Positions 7,465-61,131 of a DNA stretch of 64,000 nucleotides are shown piece by piece. The position numbers were made by a program, and so were the translations under genes. The stretch covers positions 62,001 through 126,000 of the IMG/VR virus record IMGVR_UViG_3300028920_000022, one strand, 5' to 3'. Under the pieces are notes generated by a model. It had not been told where the DNA came from. It worked only from the letters and a program-made list of their open reading frames with translations, and ran no database searches. How positions within the stretch are numbered: position 1 is the first letter of the stretch; each line of letters opens with the position of its first letter.

Positions 7465-7677
7465 ATGGTTAAGGAAAGAAAAGCTCAGTGGCGGCAGGAC
7501 ACGCCGCAACAACAGATGGTAGCTTTAACGCAAGCAATTGCTGGTTATGCTGTGTGGTTTGTTGAGGAGCCGGAAGCCTTAAAACCCGAGAACGTACAGA
7601 GAGTATTTCAAAACATAAACGAAAAGTGTGAGGATCTTTTCGAACTTTCCAATTGGATGGATTCACAATGGCAATGA
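7465..7677 (+). CDS. hypothetical protein
   Basis: behind promoter 7426-7455. Confidence 0.65.
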   Translation: MVKERKAQWRQDTPQQQMVALTQAIAGYAVWFVEEPEALKPENVQRVFQNINEKCEDLFELSNWMDSQWQ

Positions 7678-8537
7678 AGGCACAAAACCCCGAACTTTGG
7701 GCAGCACAACGGATTCTTGATCTTTTGGAGCAGGGCGGTCTTCCACCTTGGCGAAAGCCTTGGAAGGGCTGCGCAATGCCTCAGAACATGACGAGCCGGC
7801 GGGAATATAACGGATTGAACCGTTGGATGCTTCTCATGGCGCCTTATGGTTCTCCTTTTTATATCACCATTAAGCAGATCAACGCGCTTGGTGGCAAGAT
7901 TATCAAGGGAGAGAAGCCTTGGCCCGTTTTCTTCTGGCAGCGGATTGAGAAGGAACTAAAGGACGGCTCGACTCGTAATTATCTATTTTGCCGAGGTTAC
8001 AAGGTGTGGAATGTGGAGCAATGCGAAGGGCTACCGGAGGATAAGATTCCGGATCTTGAGGCTGAGCTTCATGAGCACGACACCATTGCGGAATGCGAGG
8101 CAATTGTTCAGGGATACGAAGGTGCTCCGGAGATTATTCCTGACATTGGTCGGTGTTACTATGCGCCACTGACTGACAAGGTTGGGATGGTTCCGATTGA
8201 GCATTTCGACACTGCTGAACATTATTACAGTGCTCTTTTTCATGAGTTTGCTCATTCCACGGGGCATGGGAGCCGATTGGACCGGGAGGGTTTGACGAAG
8301 CTGGTGGGGGAAGGCAGCCACGAATACAGTCAGGAGGAGCTGGTAGCGGAGTTTTGTTCGGCAATGTTGTGTGCGCAGGCAGGGATTGATCAAGAGGTGA
8401 TTGAGAATCAGGCGGCATACATTGCCGGGTGGCACAAGCGTCTACGTGGGGATCCGGAAGCATTGGTGTTTGCCAGTCGGGACGCAAACAAGGCATTCAA
8501 CCATATTGTTGGAAAAACCTATGAAACGGAAGAATAA
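7668..8537 (+). CDS. ardC: ArdC-like antirestriction ssDNA-binding protein (DUF1738 plus zincin-like domain)
   Basis: PPWRKPW, Y.G.N, HEFAHSTGH, EELVAE, AAYIAGW motifs. Confidence 0.88.
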   Translation: MAMKAQNPELWAAQRILDLLEQGGLPPWRKPWKGCAMPQNMTSRREYNGLNRWMLLMAPYGSPFYITIKQINALGGKIIKGEKPWPVFFWQRIEKELKDGSTRNYLFCRGYKVWNVEQCEGLPEDKIPDLEAELHEHDTIAECEAIVQGYEGAPEIIPDIGRCYYAPLTDKVGMVPIEHFDTAEHYYSALFHEFAHSTGHGSRLDREGLTKLVGEGSHEYSQEELVAEFCSAMLCAQAGIDQEVIENQAAYIAGWHKRLRGDPEALVFASRDANKAFNHIVGKTYETEE

Positions 8538-9863: not shown

Positions 9864-10286
9864 ATGAGTAAAATTATTTCTGTAGACGGCGGTGTAATCG
9901 AAACTTTTGGGTATAGTTTTAGTAAACAAAAGGAATCTATCAGCTCAGTAGGCAGGGTATACATAGGAAAAGGGGCGTATAAAGCGTCACCCAATTCTTG
10001 TAAATATAATAAAGCATACCTAATGAGTGTTGAAATATGTATCGAGGGAAAGCATTATAGCACCTGCTATAACATCATTGGCAAAAATATCAAGGATTTT
10101 CCTAACATTACTGGAAACGCTGGTGTTTTGCGGGCAATTCAGTTTGTTTTGGCTCGTCTCGATGGAGAAGAAATAACAAAGCTTATTGGATATATTTTCC
10201 AAGTTGGGTTTCGAGCAGGACAGCAGGATTTGCAAAAGAATCTTCGTACATTACTTGACATTGACCGAAGTATAGCCGAGTGGTAG
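9864..10286 (+). CDS. hypothetical protein
   Basis: ORF. Confidence 0.6.
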   Translation: MSKIISVDGGVIETFGYSFSKQKESISSVGRVYIGKGAYKASPNSCKYNKAYLMSVEICIEGKHYSTCYNIIGKNIKDFPNITGNAGVLRAIQFVLARLDGEEITKLIGYIFQVGFRAGQQDLQKNLRTLLDIDRSIAEW

Positions 10287-23759: not shown

Positions 23760-24461
23760 ATGACAGATAAATTCGACTGGGACGACTACGAAGATCCAAT
23801 AGATCCTTCAGAAATATGCGGAAGACGCATTGCGGAGGTTGTAGTTATTTGTGGCGGGTATCGGTTTGAATCCGAATGTATAGCTCCAGACGAAGAACAT
23901 TCGAATACTTTTGATTTATCTTGCGAGTTTGTGGAATCGCTAGGTGTTTCTGAGCCTAAACGTAAGTCTAAGACATTTTTGGTTTTAGATAACTATGGTA
24001 ATGACATGATTCCCAATCGTTTGGAAAATCGCATTATTAACGAAACTCCTTATACTATTGCTATTGATCGGGATAGCGGGGTTATTCACACGATTATTTT
24101 CCGACCAATCAAGATGCAAACCGATGATTTACGATCTGTTTCTAGCAATATGGTGGCTGCATTTATTTTTGGTTTTCCCGCTGACGAAGAGGAGTACGGG
24201 GTTCCAACCGAATATTTGGGCAAGTTGGATGAGCTAAAGCATCAAACGCGCCCATTTAGAATTGATGTGGACAGTTTTTGTTTGATGGAGTTTTGTGAGC
24301 GCGAGAAGTCTTACGATGATTTACAGCAGTCGGTTATTGTCGATTTGCGTTTTAATAAAAAGACTTTAAATATATGTCCAGAGTGGTGGCGTGAAACTTC
24401 CGTTTGGAAACCGCCGACAACCTGGACAAATGTGTATCTAAAGGATTATAGAAATGGCTGA
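23760..24461 (+). CDS. hypothetical acidic protein
   Basis: ORF. Confidence 0.65.
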   Translation: MTDKFDWDDYEDPIDPSEICGRRIAEVVVICGGYRFESECIAPDEEHSNTFDLSCEFVESLGVSEPKRKSKTFLVLDNYGNDMIPNRLENRIINETPYTIAIDRDSGVIHTIIFRPIKMQTDDLRSVSSNMVAAFIFGFPADEEEYGVPTEYLGKLDELKHQTRPFRIDVDSFCLMEFCEREKSYDDLQQSVIVDLRFNKKTLNICPEWWRETSVWKPPTTWTNVYLKDYRNG

Positions 24462-24462
24462 C
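24417..24462 (+). repeat. 46-bp direct repeat, copy 1
   Basis: ACAACCTGGA(C/T)AAATGTGTATCTAAAGGATTATAGAAATGGCTGAC; one mismatch to copy 2. Confidence 0.95.
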
Positions 24463-24696
24463 AACGAACCGGATTGTTCAAATCCAAACAAAATAGTGTG
24501 GGTACCATTTTGGTATGGTGATCATTGGTGCGCGATTTATAATGGAACAATTGTTGGCTGGGTTAAACGCGGTGCGGGAACACCGGGTTATCCGTTATGG
24601 TTGTGGAAAACTGATGGTCATTGTGATGGCGTTGGTTCGTTAGACGAGGCTAAATCTGGAGTTATTGCTGCGTTGCAAAAGCAGGGCGTAATATGA
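24454..24696 (+). CDS. hypothetical Trp-rich protein
   Basis: ORF. Confidence 0.6.
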   Translation: MADNEPDCSNPNKIVWVPFWYGDHWCAIYNGTIVGWVKRGAGTPGYPLWLWKTDGHCDGVGSLDEAKSGVIAALQKQGVI

Positions 24697-26801: not shown

Positions 26802-26847
26802 ACAACCTGGATAAATGTGTATCTAAAGGATTATAGAAATGGCTGAC
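26802..26847 (+). repeat. 46-bp direct repeat, copy 2
   Basis: 45/46 identical to 24417-24462. Confidence 0.95.
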
Positions 26848-27029
26848 GGACAGATTGCAGTATTTTATATAGTGGGTGGGTCTCAGGTTGAATTAATCCA
26901 GAACGATGGGAAGTTTGTTGTTTCTACGCAAGTTGGCGAAGAAAAATCTACAGAATTTTTTGAGAGTATAAACGAAGCCACAAGGGTATACTCAAAAAAG
27001 TGTGACAATTTGTTGAGGGGTCGAAACGT

Positions 27030-27617: not shown

Positions 27618-27998
27618 ATGAGGAAAGTAACAACAATGTCTAAAGAGTGGCTCAAGAAATTAATAGGTAATAACCGCCTACTAGACGCGATTGTTTACAT
27701 CTTAGCTGTATGTTTAATAATGATCGCGATACAGCATTTTATAAACAACAATGTGTGGGAGGGAATAATTTATTTAATCTTTTGTGCGTTTTTGTGGATA
27801 AATGTTAAGCAAAGGCGTCTCATTGACAGCTATATAGACGAAATAATTCCAGAGTATCAAAAACTAAACGACAACACCTTAAAGGTGGCGGAAGAAGCTG
27901 CTGCCAAATACGAATATATTATCAACGAATATAGGAACAAAATCGAAGTTTTACAAGGAAACGCGCCACCAAAAGACAATACCAAATACTTAAATTAA
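27618..27998 (+). CDS. two-TM membrane protein with coiled coil
   Basis: two hydrophobic segments. Confidence 0.65.
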   Translation: MRKVTTMSKEWLKKLIGNNRLLDAIVYILAVCLIMIAIQHFINNNVWEGIIYLIFCAFLWINVKQRRLIDSYIDEIIPEYQKLNDNTLKVAEEAAAKYEYIINEYRNKIEVLQGNAPPKDNTKYLN

Positions 27999-28179
27999 CC
28001 ACGGGACTCAGTGTATCCAGCAAGCCCAACATCAACCATTTACCAACGCCTGGGTCTTTTTGACAGAAAAATAGCGCTATTTTCTACCAGGCAGAGGTTG
28101 GTTTGTGCGGCAGGTTTGTGGCTCTACTTGGGAGTATGCGGTCAGCTACTGTAGGCAGGTTCGAACCCTGTTCCGTGGA
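27999..28179 (+). ncRNA. tRNA-like RNA with a large internal insert
   Basis: acceptor CCACGGG/TCCGTGG plus A; T-arm GCAGG-TTCGAAC-CCTGT; fills the intergenic gap exactly. Confidence 0.65.
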
Positions 28180-28181
28180 CT

Positions 28182-28436
28182 ATGGATTTTGACAAAATAT
28201 ATCAGGAAGTAATAGAACTAGTCGCTATTTCTGGTAAACCAAGTTCTGTTGCGTTAGATAGGTTTCATAGTCATGATTGGGCGATTTCGATTCGAGAATC
28301 TTTTGAGTGTGATGTTAAATTCGAATGCCAAACTTGTGGGTTTTGGTTTTTTTATTGCACGGAAGATAAAAGAGTTAATGCATCTTGGTTTAAATACACT
28401 TGTCAAGAATTAACTATCAAAGATATAATCACTTGA
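28182..28436 (+). CDS. zinc-ribbon protein with C-terminal IKDIIT motif
   Basis: H..CQTCG..CQELTIKDIIT*. Confidence 0.65.
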   Translation: MDFDKIYQEVIELVAISGKPSSVALDRFHSHDWAISIRESFECDVKFECQTCGFWFFYCTEDKRVNASWFKYTCQELTIKDIIT

Positions 28437-33324: not shown

Positions 33325-34137
33325 ATGGCAGCAAGAGCAGTTTGTAGTGGGTCTATTACTTTTGGTCTAGTTACAGTTCCGGTCAAGCTGTATACGGCAG
33401 CTTCCAGCGAATCAGTAAGTTTTAACTTTATCTCCCCTTCCAGTGTAGGAAAGGGTAAAACCTTGAAGAAGGCACGCATGCCATTGTTGGATGCTGTTAA
33501 TGGCAAGGAAATTGATCGTAGCACATGTCCACGCGGATACGAATATGCTAAGGGAGAGTTTGTGGTCTTTTCTGCGGAAGAGATTAAGAAGCTCGAAGCT
33601 ACCAAGAATAGCTGTATCGAAATTCAGGAATTTGCCGAAATCAGTGCCGTGGATCTGATTCAGGTGGAAAAGTCCTATTATGTCAAGCCTGACAAGGGTG
33701 GTGACAAGGGTTATAAGCTGCTTTCTCAGGTAATGAAAGAAAAAAGCGTAGCCGCCATTGCCTCATGGACCTACAAGGGCAAAGAGCGTCTCGTTATGGT
33801 GCGAGATTACAAGGGTGGTTTGCTGCTTCATCAGTTGTATTATGTCAACGAAGTTCGGGATTTCGATGACAATTGCGCAGCCGTTTCATTGTCCGAGCCT
33901 GAGCTGGATATTGCTTCACAGCTAATTGATCAGCACACTACTGGCGCGCTGGATTTGAGCAAATATCGCGATGTTCATGTTGATCGGGTCATGAAGGCGG
34001 TGGATCAAAAGAAGGCTGGTGGTGAGGTTAACATTGAAACCGCTGCGGCTGCTTCGTCTCTTGGTACTCTGGAGGCTATGCAAGCAATGTTGAAGGCTTC
34101 TAAGAAGTCACCCAAAAAGAAGGCGCCAAAGAAGTAA
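33325..34137 (+). CDS. ku: Ku (NHEJ DNA end-binding) protein
   Basis: G.ITFGLVTVPVKLY.A, GYEY.KG, YYV.PD, basic C-tail. Confidence 0.93.
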   Translation: MAARAVCSGSITFGLVTVPVKLYTAASSESVSFNFISPSSVGKGKTLKKARMPLLDAVNGKEIDRSTCPRGYEYAKGEFVVFSAEEIKKLEATKNSCIEIQEFAEISAVDLIQVEKSYYVKPDKGGDKGYKLLSQVMKEKSVAAIASWTYKGKERLVMVRDYKGGLLLHQLYYVNEVRDFDDNCAAVSLSEPELDIASQLIDQHTTGALDLSKYRDVHVDRVMKAVDQKKAGGEVNIETAAAASSLGTLEAMQAMLKASKKSPKKKAPKK

Positions 34138-38409: not shown

Positions 38410-38466
38410 GGTTTTCGCCTTAGGAACCGCTTGACAAGTGCCCGTTCTGATTGGTATTATCAGGGC

Positions 38467-39354
38467 ATGGTAGACAGAATTCAGTGGTATTGCGGTCCGC
38501 GGCTCGATGGCGTGCTCGCTGATCTGCAGGACCTTGAAGACCAGGGAAACCGTGTTGCCGAGCGCAAAAAGGACGGTCGCTGGTGTGGTCTATATGTAGA
38601 TTACTTTAAATCTTGTAAACATAAATTCGAATCTCGTGCTGGAATTGATCATGAAGATTCGCTACTATTGGGTTTAAATAATCTAGATCTTGGTGATTTG
38701 GGTAAAGATACTATTCTAGTTGGGGAACTAGAAGCGGGAACCACAGCAGCTAATATACGGTTTTCTCGATTGGGATACCGACGTATATGGTTATTCGATG
38801 TGGTTTGTTTGAGGGGACATGATTTGCGCCACATGGTTCTACGGGACCGTCGTATTCTATTGAGGGAAACCATTTGGAACATGTTTCCCGCCAAGACGCA
38901 GCAACGATTGCCTTTGGTGGAAGACAGTGAGGATAATTTTGTAGATTTCTACAAGCGTACTTTGGAAGATGGTGACGAGGGTGTGGTCATAAAGAGGTTA
39001 GATATTTCTGGCTGGTCCTATCGTTCGTCTGGGAAAACTGATCATTGGGTCCGGGTTAAGCCCACACGAACGATTGACTATGCCGTTATTGGTCCAGACA
39101 AAACCGACGGAGGAGATTTGACAGCCAATCTTGGGTTGTGGGAAAACGGTAAGTTGCGCAAGGTTCTCAAGTACCAGCTACCTCAAATGACACTTTTGCC
39201 TAACGGACATTTGGCAGAAGAGGGAAGGGTGGTTGAGATGTACGGGCGTGAATTGTTTGAATCAGGATCTCTGCGTTCTGCGCAATTCCTGCGCTGGCGA
39301 GATGATAAAACGCCTGATATGTGTGATGGAACAATTAATATGGTGAGTTTATGA
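38467..39354 (+). CDS. compact ATP-dependent DNA ligase (start corrected, leaderless)
   Basis: motifs I ERKKDG, III GEL, IIIa FDVV, IV EGVVIK, V VKP, VI FLRWRDDK. Confidence 0.82.
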   Translation: MVDRIQWYCGPRLDGVLADLQDLEDQGNRVAERKKDGRWCGLYVDYFKSCKHKFESRAGIDHEDSLLLGLNNLDLGDLGKDTILVGELEAGTTAANIRFSRLGYRRIWLFDVVCLRGHDLRHMVLRDRRILLRETIWNMFPAKTQQRLPLVEDSEDNFVDFYKRTLEDGDEGVVIKRLDISGWSYRSSGKTDHWVRVKPTRTIDYAVIGPDKTDGGDLTANLGLWENGKLRKVLKYQLPQMTLLPNGHLAEEGRVVEMYGRELFESGSLRSAQFLRWRDDKTPDMCDGTINMVSL

Positions 39355-53802: not shown

Positions 53803-54396
53803 ATGAAAGCTTTGTTACTAGTTGATATTCAAAACGATTTTCTGCCAGGCGGTTCGCTGGCGGTAAATGAGGGGGATTTAATTATCCCCGTTGCAAACGA
53901 ATTGATGGCGCCCAGAGTTACAGATCTGGTGGTTGCAACACAAGATTGGCACCCTCATGGACACGGAAGTTTTGCCTCTGCTAATGGTAAAAACCCTTTC
54001 GAAATGGGTGAGTTATCCGGTTTGCCACAAGTAATGTGGCCAGACCACTGTGTTCAGCATACTTTTGGTGCTCAGCTGGCAGATGAATTAAAAGAAGAAA
54101 AAATTCACAAAACATTTGTTAAAGGAACTGATCCTACTGTTGATAGCTATAGTGCGTTTTATGACAATGCGAAGCGCAATTCCACCGGATTAGGCGAGTG
54201 GCTGAAAAAACAGGGGGTTACTGAGCTTATTGTTTTAGGTTTGGCTACCGATTACTGTGTCAAGTTTTCAGTATTGGATGCATTAGAGCTTGGTTTTAAA
54301 GTCAAACTTGTTGTTGATGGCTGCCGGGCGGTTGATCCGGTTGCTGGAGAACGGGCTATAAAAGATATGGAAGAGGCTGGGGCAGAATTAATATGA
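53803..54396 (+). CDS. pncA: nicotinamidase/pyrazinamidase
   Basis: VDIQNDF, QDWHP..H, WPDHC, KG, GLATDYCV. Confidence 0.95.
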   Translation: MKALLLVDIQNDFLPGGSLAVNEGDLIIPVANELMAPRVTDLVVATQDWHPHGHGSFASANGKNPFEMGELSGLPQVMWPDHCVQHTFGAQLADELKEEKIHKTFVKGTDPTVDSYSAFYDNAKRNSTGLGEWLKKQGVTELIVLGLATDYCVKFSVLDALELGFKVKLVVDGCRAVDPVAGERAIKDMEEAGAELI

Positions 54397-55721
54397 CCAC
54401 GTTAGCAATGACCGTAGCAAAAGCAGAAAGCCATCCCAACGCGGATGCGTTGCGTGTGTATCAATTTGCTCTTCCAAACAGGGAAGATACGCTACAGGTT
54501 GTGGCTAATTTAGAAAATGTCTACGAAGTTGGTGACGTTGTGGTAGTGGTTTTGGCAGACGCCACTCTTAAAGACAATACCAATATAAAAGCCTGCAAAC
54601 TGCGCGGAGTGCCTTCGTATGGAATGGCGCTTGGTAAAACCGAAGTTGAAGTAGGTACCGACTTAACTGAGCAATATGAGTTGCCTGTTGTTCAACGCCG
54701 TGGTGTAAACGTAATCAAATGGACCGAAATTGAATCGTTGTATAATGTGCGACGTGGTCTAAAAGAAATGGGTAAAGAAGATACCCATGTGACGTACTTA
54801 GGGAAAGTAAAGTTGCATGGCAGCTGCGCCGGAATTCAATTATTTACTGACGGACGTATTGTTCCACAAAGCCGTACAAGAGTTTTAGATCCGGAAGATG
54901 ATAATATGGGATTTGCCCGCTGGACAGTTTCCATGTACGATTATTTTTCGCAAGTGCGAGCCAGAGCAAACGAGCTAGGTTATGATCATGTCGTTATTTT
55001 TGGAGAGTGGTCGGGGTCTGGGATCAATAAAGGTGTAGCTATATCTAAAATTGATAGAAAGATTCTGGCTGTTTTTGCGGTACAAATTGGCGGATTGGAT
55101 ACGCCAGCGAAACTAGATATTAACGGTACATCTATCCGCAAACTGTTTCCAGAACATGATGACGTATTCGTTTTGCCCTGGTTGGGTGATGCTTTAATGC
55201 TTGATTTTTCTAACAAAGAACAGTTAGAACGGCAGGCTGAGAAGATAAACCAGTTGGTAGAATCGGTAGAAACACGAGATCCTTGGGTTTACGACACTTT
55301 TGGTGTAGACGGTCTTGGCGAAGGTGTGGTAATGTATCCACTCATCGATAAAAAATACCTCGGAAAAGATGGTCCTATCTTTGTGGATAAAATGGAATTT
55401 TCTGACCTAGTATTTAAAGCCAAAGGTGAGAAACACAAAGTGGTCAAAAGCAAAAAAGCAGCCCAGATTGATCCTGAAGTAGCTGCTGGGGTGGAAGATT
55501 TTGTATCTTTGTTTGTGACTGAGCCACGACTAGAACAGTTCGCACAGCAGGTGGGAATTAGTCAGAAAAATACTGGAGAGTTTCTGAAAAGGTTTTGTTC
55601 TGATGTACAAAAAGAAAGTGTTGCTGAGCTGGAAGCTTCTGGTTTAGAATGGAAACAAGTATCAAAACCTGTCGGCACAGCAGCTAGAACATGGTATTTA
55701 AACGAATGTAAAAAACTATGA
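54393..55721 (+). CDS. RNA ligase with N-terminal tRNA-binding-like domain (DRB0094/Rnl2-like)
   Basis: HPNAD.L, KLRG..S.G, KVKLHGS, FGEW, GEGVV, FKAKGEKH. Confidence 0.8.
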   Translation: MTTLAMTVAKAESHPNADALRVYQFALPNREDTLQVVANLENVYEVGDVVVVVLADATLKDNTNIKACKLRGVPSYGMALGKTEVEVGTDLTEQYELPVVQRRGVNVIKWTEIESLYNVRRGLKEMGKEDTHVTYLGKVKLHGSCAGIQLFTDGRIVPQSRTRVLDPEDDNMGFARWTVSMYDYFSQVRARANELGYDHVVIFGEWSGSGINKGVAISKIDRKILAVFAVQIGGLDTPAKLDINGTSIRKLFPEHDDVFVLPWLGDALMLDFSNKEQLERQAEKINQLVESVETRDPWVYDTFGVDGLGEGVVMYPLIDKKYLGKDGPIFVDKMEFSDLVFKAKGEKHKVVKSKKAAQIDPEVAAGVEDFVSLFVTEPRLEQFAQQVGISQKNTGEFLKRFCSDVQKESVAELEASGLEWKQVSKPVGTAARTWYLNECKKL

Positions 55722-59799: not shown

Positions 59800-61131
59800 A
59801 TGTGGAGAGAGTTCCGTAGACTTACCAAACAAGCGGAGCTTTACTGGAAAATAAAGCAAGATGGTGACAGCTATACCACCGAACATGGGCAGGTTGGTAC
59901 AGAAAACCCACAAACATTCTCAGACACACCCGGATCAAAAGGAAAAGAGGGAACTAAAGCATTCGTTAATGCTGTAGACAATTGCACCTTTAATGTGGAA
60001 CGTGAAATTCGCAAAAAGGAAGAACACGGTTATATAGAATACATAGATGGTAAACTGGTTAATACAGCAATTACAGATATAGATTTTAACAAATTTTTAC
60101 CTAAACCTTTTTGCAGTTATAAGCCGCAAACTTCTATCACAGAAAGTGCACATAAAAAGATTTTTAAACGTGGTGCTGCTAGGTATACCCGTAAAAGGGA
60201 TGGCATGCAGCATATTGCTGTCAGACACACTTGGGGTTGGGAAATATATACCCGAAGAATGGATTTGGCTAGTGATAGATTTCCCCTGCATATCAAACAG
60301 CTAGAGAGAACGAATTTTGGTGTAGGTACTATTTTAGCCGGTGAAATGATATGTGAGTTTGAAGGGCTAGATGATTTTACTGCACATGCCCGGGGCATTA
60401 GTCGTATTTGTAGGAGCGATCCGCCTGAGGCACGTAAACTGATTGAGGATGGGGAAGTAACCGAACCTATCTTTTACATGTTTGATATTATTTATAACAA
60501 CAAAATTCCGTTAAGAGATGTAAAATATGATGACCGTCGCCAGCTGTTCGTTGAAGGGGTGGGTGACGATTTAGAGCATATTAAATATGTTCAACTGATG
60601 GAGGGTTTAACTCCTGATAATTGGGAAAAAATAGCAAAAGAAAACAAATGGGAAGGGTTTGTCATTGTTGATGGCGATTCAGTTCCTGGGGAAAAATTCT
60701 TTTCTTTTGATGGAGACGCTAAGCGACCCAAGGGGCATCACAAACTGAAGCCGAATTGGGAAAGTGATGTTGTTATATATGCTGGGGTTTTTGGTACCGG
60801 CAAACGGCTGGGTAGAATTGGGTCAGTGTTGGTTGCACAAATCCACCCTCACACAAAGAAATGGATACGTTGTGGTAAGGTTGGTTCTGGGTTTACCGAT
60901 GAAGATCTGTTAGAGTTGGAACTGATTTTTACAGAAAAGAACTTACCAATATTCAAAAAAGAAAAAGAAGACACGGTTGATTTAGAAACGTGTGATGGAA
61001 TTGTGGCGATGATTGAGTATGGTGAGCGGCAACCAAAGACTCAGAAGTTTAGGTTTCCGGTGTTTATGCGTATCAGAACTGATAAAACAATGGGCGAGTG
61101 TATTGTGGAAAGATTAGCGGCAGAGGAATGA
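59800..61131 (+). CDS. ATP-dependent DNA ligase with N-terminal WGR-like domain
   Basis: TRKRDG, GEM, FDII, EGFV, KLKP, GKVGSGF, RFPVFMRIR.DK. Confidence 0.88.
   Translation: MWREFRRLTKQAELYWKIKQDGDSYTTEHGQVGTENPQTFSDTPGSKGKEGTKAFVNAVDNCTFNVEREIRKKEEHGYIEYIDGKLVNTAITDIDFNKFLPKPFCSYKPQTSITESAHKKIFKRGAARYTRKRDGMQHIAVRHTWGWEIYTRRMDLASDRFPLHIKQLERTNFGVGTILAGEMICEFEGLDDFTAHARGISRICRSDPPEARKLIEDGEVTEPIFYMFDIIYNNKIPLRDVKYDDRRQLFVEGVGDDLEHIKYVQLMEGLTPDNWEKIAKENKWEGFVIVDGDSVPGEKFFSFDGDAKRPKGHHKLKPNWESDVVIYAGVFGTGKRLGRIGSVLVAQIHPHTKKWIRCGKVGSGFTDEDLLELELIFTEKNLPIFKKEKEDTVDLETCDGIVAMIEYGERQPKTQKFRFPVFMRIRTDKTMGECIVERLAAEE

What the first reader, a model, noticed from the sequence alone, without database searches (positions are those of the whole stretch)
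27999..28179. 181-nt tRNA-shaped RNA with a ~100-nt structured insert
Seen: 7-bp acceptor (CCACGGG/TCCGTGG), discriminator A and a canonical T-arm (GCAGG-TTCGAAC-CCTGT) bracket about 150 nt. The interior includes ACCAAC/GTTGGT, GCCTGG/CCAGGC, GTC-T5-GAC, a near-palindrome AGAAAAATAGCGCTATTTTCT, and possible anticodon-like (GCTC-TACTTGG-GAGT) and variable-like (TGCGGT/ACTGTA) arms. It begins at the base after one stop codon and ends 2 nt before the next ATG. It lacks the G3:U70 Ala identity and the size of tmRNA, lacks U33, and has no encoded CCA. Inference: a new tRNA-mimic ncRNA (decoy for anticodon nucleases, primer, or processing element) or a tRNA with an expanded D arm or intron.
Basis: partly seen in the sequence, partly recalled or inferred. 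Interest (0 to 1): 0.75.

Follow-up and report, generated by a model that had tools for sequence, protein, structure and literature searches.

The report
Phage tRNA-like RNA with rod insert
A 459-kb uncultured marine-sediment phage carries, in a gap between two genes, a 181-base sequence with the two ends of a tRNA but a roughly 100-base hairpin where the D arm should be; its layout resembles phage T4's unexplained "species 1" RNA, and no transcript or distant relative has yet been seen.

Summary
Window 27999-28179 has a 7-bp acceptor stem, discriminator A and a consensus T arm, and it exactly fills the gap between two ORFs.

- **Not chance.** A strict T-arm motif occurs 8 times in the genome (7 in annotated tRNAs plus this one) against 0.03 per shuffled genome. 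T arm plus acceptor occurred in 0 of 300 shuffles.
- **Not a known family.** ARAGORN and Rfam, even at E<=10, call no tRNA, tmRNA, YrlA, intron or ribozyme. No single deletion produces a canonical tRNA.
- **Fold.** The sequence fits a five-way junction: acceptor, a ~100-nt rod hairpin (z = -2.6), an anticodon-like hairpin (loop UACUUGG, A33), a variable-arm-like hairpin and the T arm.
- **Closest match.** The nearest architecture is phage T4 rnaC (species 1 RNA). I show that rnaC is a covariation-supported RNA with a closing stem, rod, hairpin and T arm. There is no sequence homology to it.
- **Context.** The phage encodes 16 ARAGORN-called tRNAs (4 with the same CC...GG-A-C ends) plus a D-armless one, a CCA-adding enzyme, an RNA ligase fused to a tRNA-binding domain, and a Ro60 ortholog.

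Only strain-level relatives were found, so there is no covariation, and no RNA data. Best reading: a tRNA-derived, non-decoding tRNA mimic cut out by tRNA-processing enzymes. Main rival: a remodelled tRNA relic.

The parts
27618..27998 (+). Upstream ORF (126 aa, weak sub-threshold TM2-like match). Its TAA stop ends one base before the element.
27999..28005 (+). Acceptor 5' strand CCACGGG. It starts with CC, like four of the phage's own tRNAs.
   Evidence: (pair probability ~1.0)
28006..28019 (+). 14-nt linker ACUCAGUGUAUCCA. It is either single-stranded or pairs with 28127-28135 in the alternative minimum-free-energy fold.
28020..28120 (+). About 100-nt imperfect rod hairpin in the D-arm position. 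A C/A-rich 5' strand pairs with a G/U-rich 3' strand, and the tip is a three-way junction.
   Evidence: z = -2.62
28048..28092 (+). Tip of the rod. GCCUGG/CCAGGC encloses the GUC-U5-GAC hairpin (28054-28064) and the A/U-rich palindromic hairpin (28065-28085).
   Evidence: pair probabilities ~1.0, 1.0 and 0.35-0.95
28121..28135 (+). Anticodon-arm-like hairpin GCUC-UACUUGG-GAGU. It has 4 bp, A in place of U33, and CUU in the anticodon position. It is thermodynamically weak (probability 0.03) and competes with pairing to the linker.
28137..28153 (+). Variable-arm-like hairpin UGCGGU-CAGCU-ACUGUA (6 bp, two G-U). A strain variant changes G28140 to A, turning a G-U pair into A-U.
28155..28171 (+). 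T arm GCAGG-UUCGAAC-CCUGU with a consensus T loop. A strain variant changes C28166 to U, giving UUCGAAU.
28172..28179 (+). Acceptor 3' strand UCCGUGG plus discriminator A, followed by C. No CCA is encoded.
28182..28436 (+). Downstream ORF (84 aa, orphan). Its ATG lies 2 nt after the discriminator, with no usable Shine-Dalgarno sequence outside the acceptor helix.

Best explanation
The element is a tRNA-derived, non-decoding tRNA-like RNA gene.

Shown: it has an intact acceptor stem, discriminator A and T arm. Together with two small hairpins and a ~100-nt rod hairpin, these close a five-way junction. It is embedded in a run of same-strand genes without a promoter or terminator of its own.

Inferred: it is transcribed as part of the polycistronic RNA. 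RNase P cuts at its 5' end, between A27998 and C27999. 3' tRNA processing follows, with CCA completion by the phage's or the host's CCA-adding enzyme. The product would be a stable ~181-184-nt RNA that offers a tRNA acceptor/T-arm 'top half' to tRNA-binding proteins, while the rod carries a separate function.

The same cuts would separate the two flanking cistrons and leave the downstream mRNA almost leaderless. Its layout matches phage T4 rnaC (species 1 RNA). I rank two roles as most likely: a mimic or scaffold in the phage's tRNA maintenance and repair, and a processing punctuation mark. Neither role has been demonstrated.
For: - T arm plus acceptor is far beyond chance. It is the only unannotated GGTTCGAAnCC T arm in the genome.
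- The element fills the intergenic gap to the base. No ORF was called inside it: the 47-aa ORF is absent from the protein collection.
- All proposed helices are intact. The rod folds better than shuffles (z = -2.6). GC is 51% against 35% in the flanks.
- The CC...GG-A-C ends match the phage's own tRNA-Pro, Leu(taa), Ile(tat) and Arg.
- The phage encodes a CCA-adding-type nucleotidyltransferase (57 bits), an RNA ligase with an N-terminal tRNA-binding domain and a Ro60 ortholog.
- The genome holds a second non-canonical tRNA, with no D arm, that scores 31.3 bits on Rfam's tRNA model.
- The two visible substitutions in a ~95% identical strain keep the structure: G-U to A-U, and T-loop position 60.
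- No promoter or terminator signal flanks the element.
- T4 rnaC has the same layout of closing stem, rod, hairpin and T arm. In rnaC, 15 of 45 pairs show compensatory changes across 4 phages, and it is conserved in 748 phage records.
Against: - There is no transcript evidence: no RNA run was listed.
- No homolog was found beyond strain level. Searches of GenBank phages, IMG/VR, JGI metagenomes, GTDB genomes and five family-level relatives (by BLAST and by a covariance model) were all negative. No helix therefore has covariation support.
- The whole-element folding z-score is only -1.59.
- The anticodon-like hairpin is thermodynamically disfavoured, with pair probability 0.03.
- Comparable GC peaks are common in this genome.
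- The resemblance to rnaC is architectural only. Model R1 matches rnaC only at the T arm, at 7.5 bits.
- Degenerate tRNA-like remnants exist in related phages (L061), so a relic is plausible.
Confidence: 0.55

Rival explanations
1. It is a relic of a tRNA gene, probably class II-like. Its D-arm region was replaced or disrupted by an inserted hairpin and its anticodon loop has decayed. It has no function of its own, although it may still be cut by RNase P as a by-product.
For: - A33, a 4-bp anticodon-like stem and no D arm mean it cannot be an ordinary tRNA.
- It is a singleton without homologs.
- Related phages carry degenerate tRNA-like pieces, for example L061, a tRNA-Leu(UAA)-like sequence with an unpaired acceptor scoring 22 bits.
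- The overall fold z-score is unremarkable.
Against: - Every helix that survives is perfect: acceptor 7/7, T arm 5/5 with a consensus loop, variable-like hairpin 6/6.
- No single deletion restores a canonical tRNA, so this is not a recent insertion.
- The insert is not a repeat or mobile element found elsewhere in the genome.
- The element fills the gap exactly in a tightly packed genome where useless DNA should be lost.
Confidence: 0.24
2. It is a working, chargeable tRNA, for example tRNA-Lys(CUU) with A73. It either carries a giant D-arm expansion or is spliced to a normal size by a phage ligase.
For: - CUU sits in the anticodon position and A at position 73. From general knowledge, these are the main LysRS identity elements.
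- The phage encodes an RNA ligase with a tRNA-binding domain.
- ARAGORN calls 'Lys(ctt)' at 70-95% of its threshold once positions ~8-100 are removed.
Against: - A33 replaces the near-universal U33, and positions 37 and 38 are G rather than A.
- No D arm is present.
- Rfam's tRNA model does not match at E<=10.
- No intron family matched, and no splice junction gives a tRNA at the default threshold.
- The phage already has tRNA-Lys(UUU).
Confidence: 0.06
3. It is the tRNA-like (Y-RNA-type) partner of the phage's Ro60/Rsr protein. The tRNA-like end would recruit an effector while the rod binds Rsr.
For: - The genome encodes a Ro60 ortholog (PDB 2nvo Rsr at E = 1e-9).
- Bacterial and phage Ro60 proteins pair with tRNA-like Y RNAs (PMC4201824).
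- Jumbo phages with TROVE proteins are expected to have a tRNA-like partner (PMC7824862).
Against: - The element lies ~302 kb from rsr, whereas known YrlA genes lie next to it (PMC4201824).
- The Ro-binding motif GNCGAAN0-1G is absent.
- The topology is the reverse of YrlA: here the ends lie in the acceptor, not in the Ro-binding stem.
- Better-placed candidates lie beside rsr: three covarying hairpin repeats and an odd 86-nt tRNA-like gene.
- The complex prediction was not run for this kind of pair, so it gives no evidence.
Confidence: 0.06
4. It is protein-coding: a read-through extension of the upstream gene past its TAA, using the phage's ochre-suppressor tRNA. The tRNA-like features would then be incidental.
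For: - The frame of ORF 27618-27998 stays open for 52 codons after the TAA, up to the TAG at 28152-28154.
- The phage encodes a tRNA with anticodon UUA.
Against: - 18% of TAA-terminated long ORFs in this genome have 50 or more open codons downstream, so this is unremarkable.
- The standard code fits the genome.
- The T arm plus acceptor never arose in 300 shuffles.
- GC rises from 35% in the flanks to 51% in the element.
Confidence: 0.03

Closest known systems
Phage T4 rnaC (species 1 RNA), a 139-nt stable RNA of the T4 tRNA region; NC_000866 70908-71046, minus strand
   Same: - It is a phage-encoded, tRNA-sized-plus RNA lying among or near phage tRNA genes.
- A consensus T arm (GGUUCGAAUCC) is followed directly by a 7-position terminal stem that pairs with the 5' end.
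- A long rod hairpin takes the place of the D and anticodon arms, and a further hairpin sits in the variable-arm position just 5' of the T arm.
- No CCA is encoded.
- The function is unknown (PMC3014915, PMC9697503).

I confirmed the rnaC structure here: z = -4.6, and 15 of 45 pairs have compensatory changes across 4 phages.
   Different: - There is no detectable sequence or profile similarity beyond the T arm.
- The rnaC terminal stem carries two conserved U-U mismatches, whereas this one is a perfect 7-bp acceptor.
- This element is 42 nt longer, has an extra anticodon-like hairpin (a five-way rather than four-way junction) and a three-way-junction tip on the rod.
- It lies between protein genes rather than inside a tRNA cluster.
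- The phages are unrelated: a T4-like coliphage against a 459-kb sediment phage.
- rnaC is conserved in 748 phage records. This element is a singleton.
Canonical and class II tRNA (Rfam RF00005)
   Same: - Acceptor stem of 7 bp, discriminator A, a T arm with the U54-U55-C56-R57-A58 loop and a long variable-arm-like hairpin.
- The same CC...GG-A-C termini as four tRNAs of this phage.
   Different: - There is no D arm; a ~100-nt rod plus a 14-nt linker stand in its place.
- The anticodon-like loop has A33.
- It is 181 nt long.
- It is not detected by ARAGORN or RF00005.
tmRNA (SsrA)
   Same: An acceptor plus T-arm tRNA-like domain closes a large inserted domain that leaves through a long helix.
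   Different: - The pair at positions 3 and 70 is A3-U70, not G3:U70.
- There is no plausible tag reading frame and no pseudoknots were called.
- It is about half the minimum size.
- ARAGORN -m and Rfam do not detect it.
- The phage has no SmpB.
- A relative, G001, carries an ordinary tmRNA elsewhere.
Bacterial and phage Y RNAs of the YrlA type, which are Ro60/Rsr partners
   Same: - They are tRNA-mimicking non-coding RNAs with a consensus T arm.
- The M. smegmatis YrlA has a 7-bp acceptor that RNase P cuts and that receives CCA (PMC4201824).
- This phage encodes a Ro60 ortholog.
   Different: - YrlA is circularly permuted relative to tRNA, with its ends in the Ro-binding stem.
- YrlA carries the GNCGAAN0-1G motif and lies next to rsr.
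- None of these three features holds here.

Membership tests
tRNA (RF00005 / ARAGORN) | Detected by the covariance model at or above 29 bits, or by ARAGORN at its default threshold | tested here: not met
   No match at the gathering threshold or at E<=10 in 27800-28400. ARAGORN at default finds nothing. Only a 'Lys(ctt)' of 89 nt with a 5/7 acceptor appears at 70% threshold.
tRNA (RF00005 / ARAGORN) | D arm after positions 8-9, and a 7-nt anticodon loop with U33 | tested here: not met
   No complementary D stem follows the acceptor. The loop UACUUGG has A at position 33.
tRNA (RF00005 / ARAGORN) | 7-bp acceptor stem, discriminator base, and a T arm with the T-loop consensus | tested here: met
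Intron-containing tRNA (group I or bulge-helix-bulge) | Removal of one intervening segment yields a canonical tRNA; the intron matches a known class | tested here: not met
   1,960 single-deletion variants gave no tRNA at ARAGORN's default threshold, and only one at 95% threshold. No intron or ribozyme family matched in Rfam at E<=10. Double introns were not tested.
tmRNA | G3:U70 alanine identity, a tag reading frame with a resume codon, pseudoknots and an SmpB partner | tested here: not met
   The pair is A3-U70. ARAGORN -m at 80% threshold and Rfam find nothing. No SmpB is present in the phage genome. Host SmpB is not testable.
YrlA / Y RNA | Ro60-binding motif GNCGAAN0-1G in the terminal stem | tested here: not met
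   The motif is absent from 27999-28179 (read directly; motif definition from PMC4201824).
YrlA / Y RNA | Encoded adjacent to a Ro60/Rsr gene | tested here: not met
   The Rsr ortholog is at genome 392448-394064. The element is at genome 89999-90179.
YrlA / Y RNA | Binds Ro60/Rsr | not testable with these tools
T4 rnaC (species 1 RNA) family | Architecture: a terminal stem closing a junction of rod hairpin, variable-position hairpin and T arm | tested here: met
   rnaC structure with covariation. Candidate fold. The candidate's helices lack covariation support.
T4 rnaC (species 1 RNA) family | Sequence or profile homology to rnaC | tested here: not met
   Model R1 hits rnaC only at the T arm, at 7.5 bits. 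A blastn search of the phage collection with the element found only T-arm matches to tRNAs.
T4 rnaC (species 1 RNA) family | Accumulates as a stable processed RNA | not testable with these tools
   No RNA run holding this sequence was listed. The three runs laid were DNA contigs.

The most novel reading that the evidence does not exclude
This is a previously undescribed class of phage tRNA mimic: a class II-type cloverleaf whose D arm is replaced by a ~100-nt rod domain. RNase P and the phage's own CCA-adding enzyme would mature it, and it would act in the tRNA conflict between phage and host. Possible roles are a decoy or sponge for a tRNA-Lys-directed anticodon nuclease, with CUU displayed in a nuclease-resistant A33 loop, or a scaffold for the phage's tRNA-binding RNA ligase or Ro60. 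It would be a functional analogue of T4 rnaC that arose independently, which would suggest that rod-bearing tRNA-like RNAs are a recurrent phage invention.
Probability: 0.15. Interest if true: 0.75.

Novelty: new variant of a known kind. Interest (0 to 1): 0.5.

Why it matters
tRNA mimics such as tmRNA, YrlA and T4 rnaC show how the tRNA shape is reused to engage tRNA-binding machinery. The function of T4 rnaC has been unknown for about 50 years.

A second, unrelated phage RNA with the same layout of closing stem, rod, hairpin and T arm would point to convergent evolution. It would also give a comparative handle on what such RNAs do. This phage carries a CCA-adding enzyme, a tRNA-binding RNA ligase, a Ro60 ortholog, an ochre-suppressor tRNA and a D-armless tRNA, which suggests that huge phages tinker extensively with tRNA-like RNAs. 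Standard annotation with ARAGORN and Rfam misses elements of this kind.

If the element is only a relic, the interest is limited to how phage tRNA genes decay.

Tried and rejected
**Known-family detection.** All negative: ARAGORN at default, with introns and in tmRNA mode; Rfam at gathering threshold and at E<=10.

**Intron hypothesis.** An exhaustive single-deletion scan gave no canonical tRNA.

**Homolog hunting.**
- blastn against GenBank phages found nothing for the 2.2-kb region, and only T-arm hits for the element alone.
- Exact or degenerate T-arm plus acceptor patterns found nothing in IMG/VR and nothing in 185,579 GTDB genomes. In JGI metagenomes they found only the own record plus L003, where an ordinary 75-nt tRNA(CAT) shares the same acceptor and T arm.
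- Searches with both immediate flanking proteins found only the window's own proteins. Proteins a few genes further out found only strain-level ENA contigs that stop short of the element.
- Family-level relatives were found through the large terminase subunit. Neither BLAST nor covariance model R1 found the element in them.

**Transcript evidence.** No RNA run was listed. The DNA contigs laid gave only one 175-nt strain-variant contig over the 3' half.

**Copy of a host tRNA 3' end (attachment-site type).** Rejected, because no prokaryote genome has this 3' end.

**Mobile or repeated insert.** Rejected, because no second copy of any part exists in the genome.

**Alternative genetic code or read-through.** Rejected as uninformative.

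**Own promoter or terminator.** None stands out; promoter-like counts are at shuffle level.

**The 243-nt 'long form' of a tRNA-like element in relative G001 (L060).** Its far 5' partner lies inside a 139-aa ORF. The 63-nt form that Rfam calls is the likelier one, so I do not count it as a second example of a long insert.

Full report
**Where it is.** The window is bases 62001-126000 of a 458,729-bp IMG/VR virus record (Ga0272441_10000008) from a marine sediment metagenome.
- The standard genetic code fits the record.
- It encodes a large terminase subunit, a portal protein, a tail-sheath-like protein and a DNA polymerase. It is therefore a tailed huge phage.
- Many of its genes have GGAG-type ribosome-binding sites. 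A family-level relative carries a tmRNA. Both point to a bacterial host.

- The element starts one base after the TAA of ORF 27618-27998 and ends two bases before the ATG of ORF 28182-28436.
- Both flanking ORFs are orphans.
- No gene was called inside the gap: the only sizeable ORF, 47 aa, is absent from the protein collection.

**Is it chance?** No.
- A strict T-arm motif occurs 8 times in the genome, 7 of them in annotated tRNAs and one here. Shuffled genomes give 0.03 per genome.
- The motif plus a 7-bp acceptor with at most one G-U never occurred in 300 shuffles. A looser descriptor gives 0.33 per genome.
- This is the only unannotated GGTTCGAAnCC T arm in the genome.
- GC is 51% against 34-35% in the flanks. 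This is weak on its own, because about 80 similar GC peaks exist.
- The whole-element folding energy is unremarkable (z = -1.59).
- The interior rod is better than shuffles (z = -2.62 for 28020-28120 and z = -2.53 for 28042-28102).

**What it is not.**
- It is not a recognised tRNA, tmRNA, tRNA-Sec, YrlA, intron, ribozyme or any other Rfam family, even at E<=10.
- ARAGORN finds nothing at default, with introns, or in tmRNA mode.
- Removing any single segment does not produce a tRNA at ARAGORN's default threshold. The best variant removes ~8-100 and gives a sub-threshold 'Lys(CTT)' with A33 and a poor D arm.
- The phage has no SmpB, and the pair at positions 3 and 70 is A-U.
- No part of the insert is repeated elsewhere in the genome.
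- No prokaryote genome among 185,579 species has this T arm plus 3' acceptor, so it is not a copied host tRNA end.
- In JGI metagenomes the only other match is an ordinary 75-nt tRNA(CAT) in an unrelated tRNA-array contig. This shows only that such an acceptor and T arm occur in real tRNAs.
- The in-frame open stretch after the upstream TAA is unremarkable. 18% of TAA-terminated long ORFs here have 50 or more open codons downstream.

**Anatomy.** Base-pair probabilities are about 1.0 for the acceptor, 0.7 for the T arm and 1.0 for the GCCUGG/CCAGGC stem with its two tip hairpins. A long imperfect helix forms between the C/A-rich 28020-28041 and the G/U-rich 28097-28120. Two overall folds are close in energy:
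- **Minimum-free-energy fold, -60.2 kcal/mol.** The linker 28006-28019 extends the rod by pairing with 28127-28135.
- **Five-way junction, -57.5 kcal/mol.** It consists of acceptor, linker, rod, anticodon-like hairpin, variable-like hairpin and T arm. This is the arm order of a class II tRNA with the rod in the D-arm position.

Without covariation I cannot choose between them.

**Comparative evidence is thin.**
- Relatives exist only at strain level. They are ENA contigs of 97% identity that end before the element and one 175-nt Logan contig from a marsh metagenome covering 28086-28217 at about 95% identity.
- Inside the element that contig shows two substitutions, G28140A (G-U to A-U in the variable-like hairpin) and C28166T (T loop to UUCGAAU), and a third, T28181C, in the 2-nt spacer after it. 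Four further differences near the contig's start are not shown.
- These changes are compatible with the structure but are not significant.
- Family-level relatives were found through the large terminase subunit (81% and 46-56% identity). They do not contain the element by BLAST or by covariance model R1.
- No RNA run was listed.

**Context that bears on function.**
- Four of the phage's 16 ARAGORN tRNAs (Pro, Leu-taa, Ile-tat, Arg) begin with CC and end ..GG-A-C without CCA, exactly like the element.
- The phage encodes a CCA-adding-type nucleotidyltransferase, an RNA ligase fused to a tRNA-binding domain and a Ro60/Rsr ortholog.
- It also has a D-armless tRNA-Ile(GAU)-like gene that ARAGORN misses but Rfam scores at 31.3 bits.
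- A relative has a 63-nt tRNA-like gene without an anticodon arm.
- This lineage therefore maintains unconventional tRNA-shaped RNAs and the enzymes to mature and repair them.
- No promoter-like or terminator-like site stands out around the element. It is probably co-transcribed with its neighbours and cut out.

**Closest known.** Phage T4 rnaC (species 1 RNA) is a 139-nt stable RNA of unknown function from the T4 tRNA region (PMC3014915; PMC9697503).
- I fetched it and found a consensus T arm, a 10-bp hairpin just upstream, a ~65-nt rod, and a terminal 7-position stem with two U-U mismatches (z = -4.6).
- It is not in Rfam.
- It is present in 748 phage records, mostly at 95% identity or more.
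- Aligned with three diverged homologs, 15 of its 45 pairs show compensatory changes, including pairs in the terminal stem, the rod, the hairpin and the T arm.
- The candidate has the same topology but no sequence relationship, a perfect acceptor, an extra hairpin and a longer rod.

**Ro60 partner?** The literature expects a tRNA-like partner for phage TROVE proteins (PMC7824862; PMC4201824).
- The element is 302 kb from rsr, lacks the GNCGAAN0-1G motif and has the opposite topology to YrlA.
- Next to rsr lie three ~65-nt hairpin repeats with compensatory changes and an odd 86-nt tRNA-like gene. These are better-placed candidates.

**Verdict.** The element is a real tRNA-derived sequence and most likely a non-decoding tRNA-like RNA processed by tRNA enzymes (confidence 0.55). 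The main rival is a remodelled tRNA relic (0.24). The remaining readings are a working tRNA (0.06), a Ro60 partner (0.06) and a coding read-through (0.03). The mechanism steps of RNase P cleavage, CCA addition, stability and protein partners are inferred and have not been shown.

Noticed in passing
G000:C1:392448-394064 (+) = L024 (outside the window): The phage encodes a Ro60/Rsr ortholog: PHROG 850 'RNA-binding protein', PDB 2nvo Rsr at E = 1e-9 and human RO60 9nen at E = 2e-6. No Pfam hit at 1e-3.
   Followed up: partly
L026:9636-9702, 9996-10066, 10152-10224 (genome ~395,635-396,223, + strand): Three ~65-70-nt repeats lie 1.6-2.2 kb downstream of rsr. Each folds as a stem-loop closed by GUAACG/CGUUAC-type ends. 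3 of 19 pairs show compensatory changes, and all share ACGCGA(G/A). They are candidate Y-RNA-like partners of the phage Rsr and match no Rfam family.
   Followed up: partly
L026:10327-10412 (genome 396326-396411, +): An odd 86-nt 'tRNA-Met(CAT)' with an encoded CCA and a long extra arm containing CGCGAAG, the motif also seen in the neighbouring repeats. ARAGORN calls it, but Rfam's tRNA model does not; the only match is tRNA-Sec at 26.8 bits, E = 0.1.
   Followed up: partly
L029:1163-1239 minus strand (genome 441163-441239): A 77-nt tRNA-Ile(GAU)-like gene with no D arm (4 nt in its place), a normal anticodon loop CUGAUAA and a ~20-nt variable region. It fills the gap between a stop codon and the next start. 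ARAGORN misses it; Rfam's tRNA model scores 31.3 bits against a cut-off of 29.
   Followed up: partly
genome c451588-451662: A suppressor tRNA with anticodon UUA, which reads UAA. TAA still ends 39% of long ORFs and the standard code fits, so this is not a wholesale reassignment.
   Followed up: partly
window 54393-55721 (+); genome 225591-225980 (+): An RNA ligase with an N-terminal tRNA-binding (tRNA_bind) domain, and a CCA-adding/poly(A)-polymerase-family nucleotidyltransferase. Together they look like a phage tRNA maturation and repair kit.
   Followed up: no
window 33325-34137, 38431-39354, 59800-61131, 7653-8537: Ku, two ATP-dependent DNA ligases (an NHEJ-like set) and an ArdC-like antirestriction/metallopeptidase protein.
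   Followed up: no
L060:1490-1552 minus strand (relative G001, 353 kb): A 63-nt tRNA-like gene with acceptor, D arm and T arm but no anticodon arm (Rfam tRNA 33.8 bits). A second copy of the 5' acceptor plus a D-arm-like sequence lies 180 nt upstream, inside a 139-aa ORF.
   Followed up: partly
L050 ~1250-1560 (relative G002); L061:1498-1566 minus strand (relative G001): L050 has a T arm followed by CCCTATC-ACCA, with the complementary GATAGGG 24 nt downstream. That gene order would suit a circularly permuted (two-piece) tmRNA, but neither ARAGORN nor Rfam calls it. L061 is a tRNA-Leu(UAA)-like sequence whose acceptor does not pair (22 bits).
   Followed up: no
window 24429-24465 and 26814-26850: The same ~37-nt gene junction, AATGTGTATCTAAAGGATTATAGAA followed by ATGGCTGAC, occurs twice. 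It coincides with the Logan contig breaks at 26802-26847.
   Followed up: no
L030:1409-1547 minus strand (phage T4 rnaC): T4 species 1 RNA is a covariation-supported tRNA-like RNA (closing stem, rod, hairpin, T arm) that is absent from Rfam. It is conserved in 748 phage records, and is 97.8% identical even in RB69.
   Followed up: yes
L003 (JGI contig Ga0310690_10493167, 1389 bp): An unrelated contig carrying 13 tightly packed tRNA genes, one with a 4-base anticodon call (ttgg).
   Followed up: no
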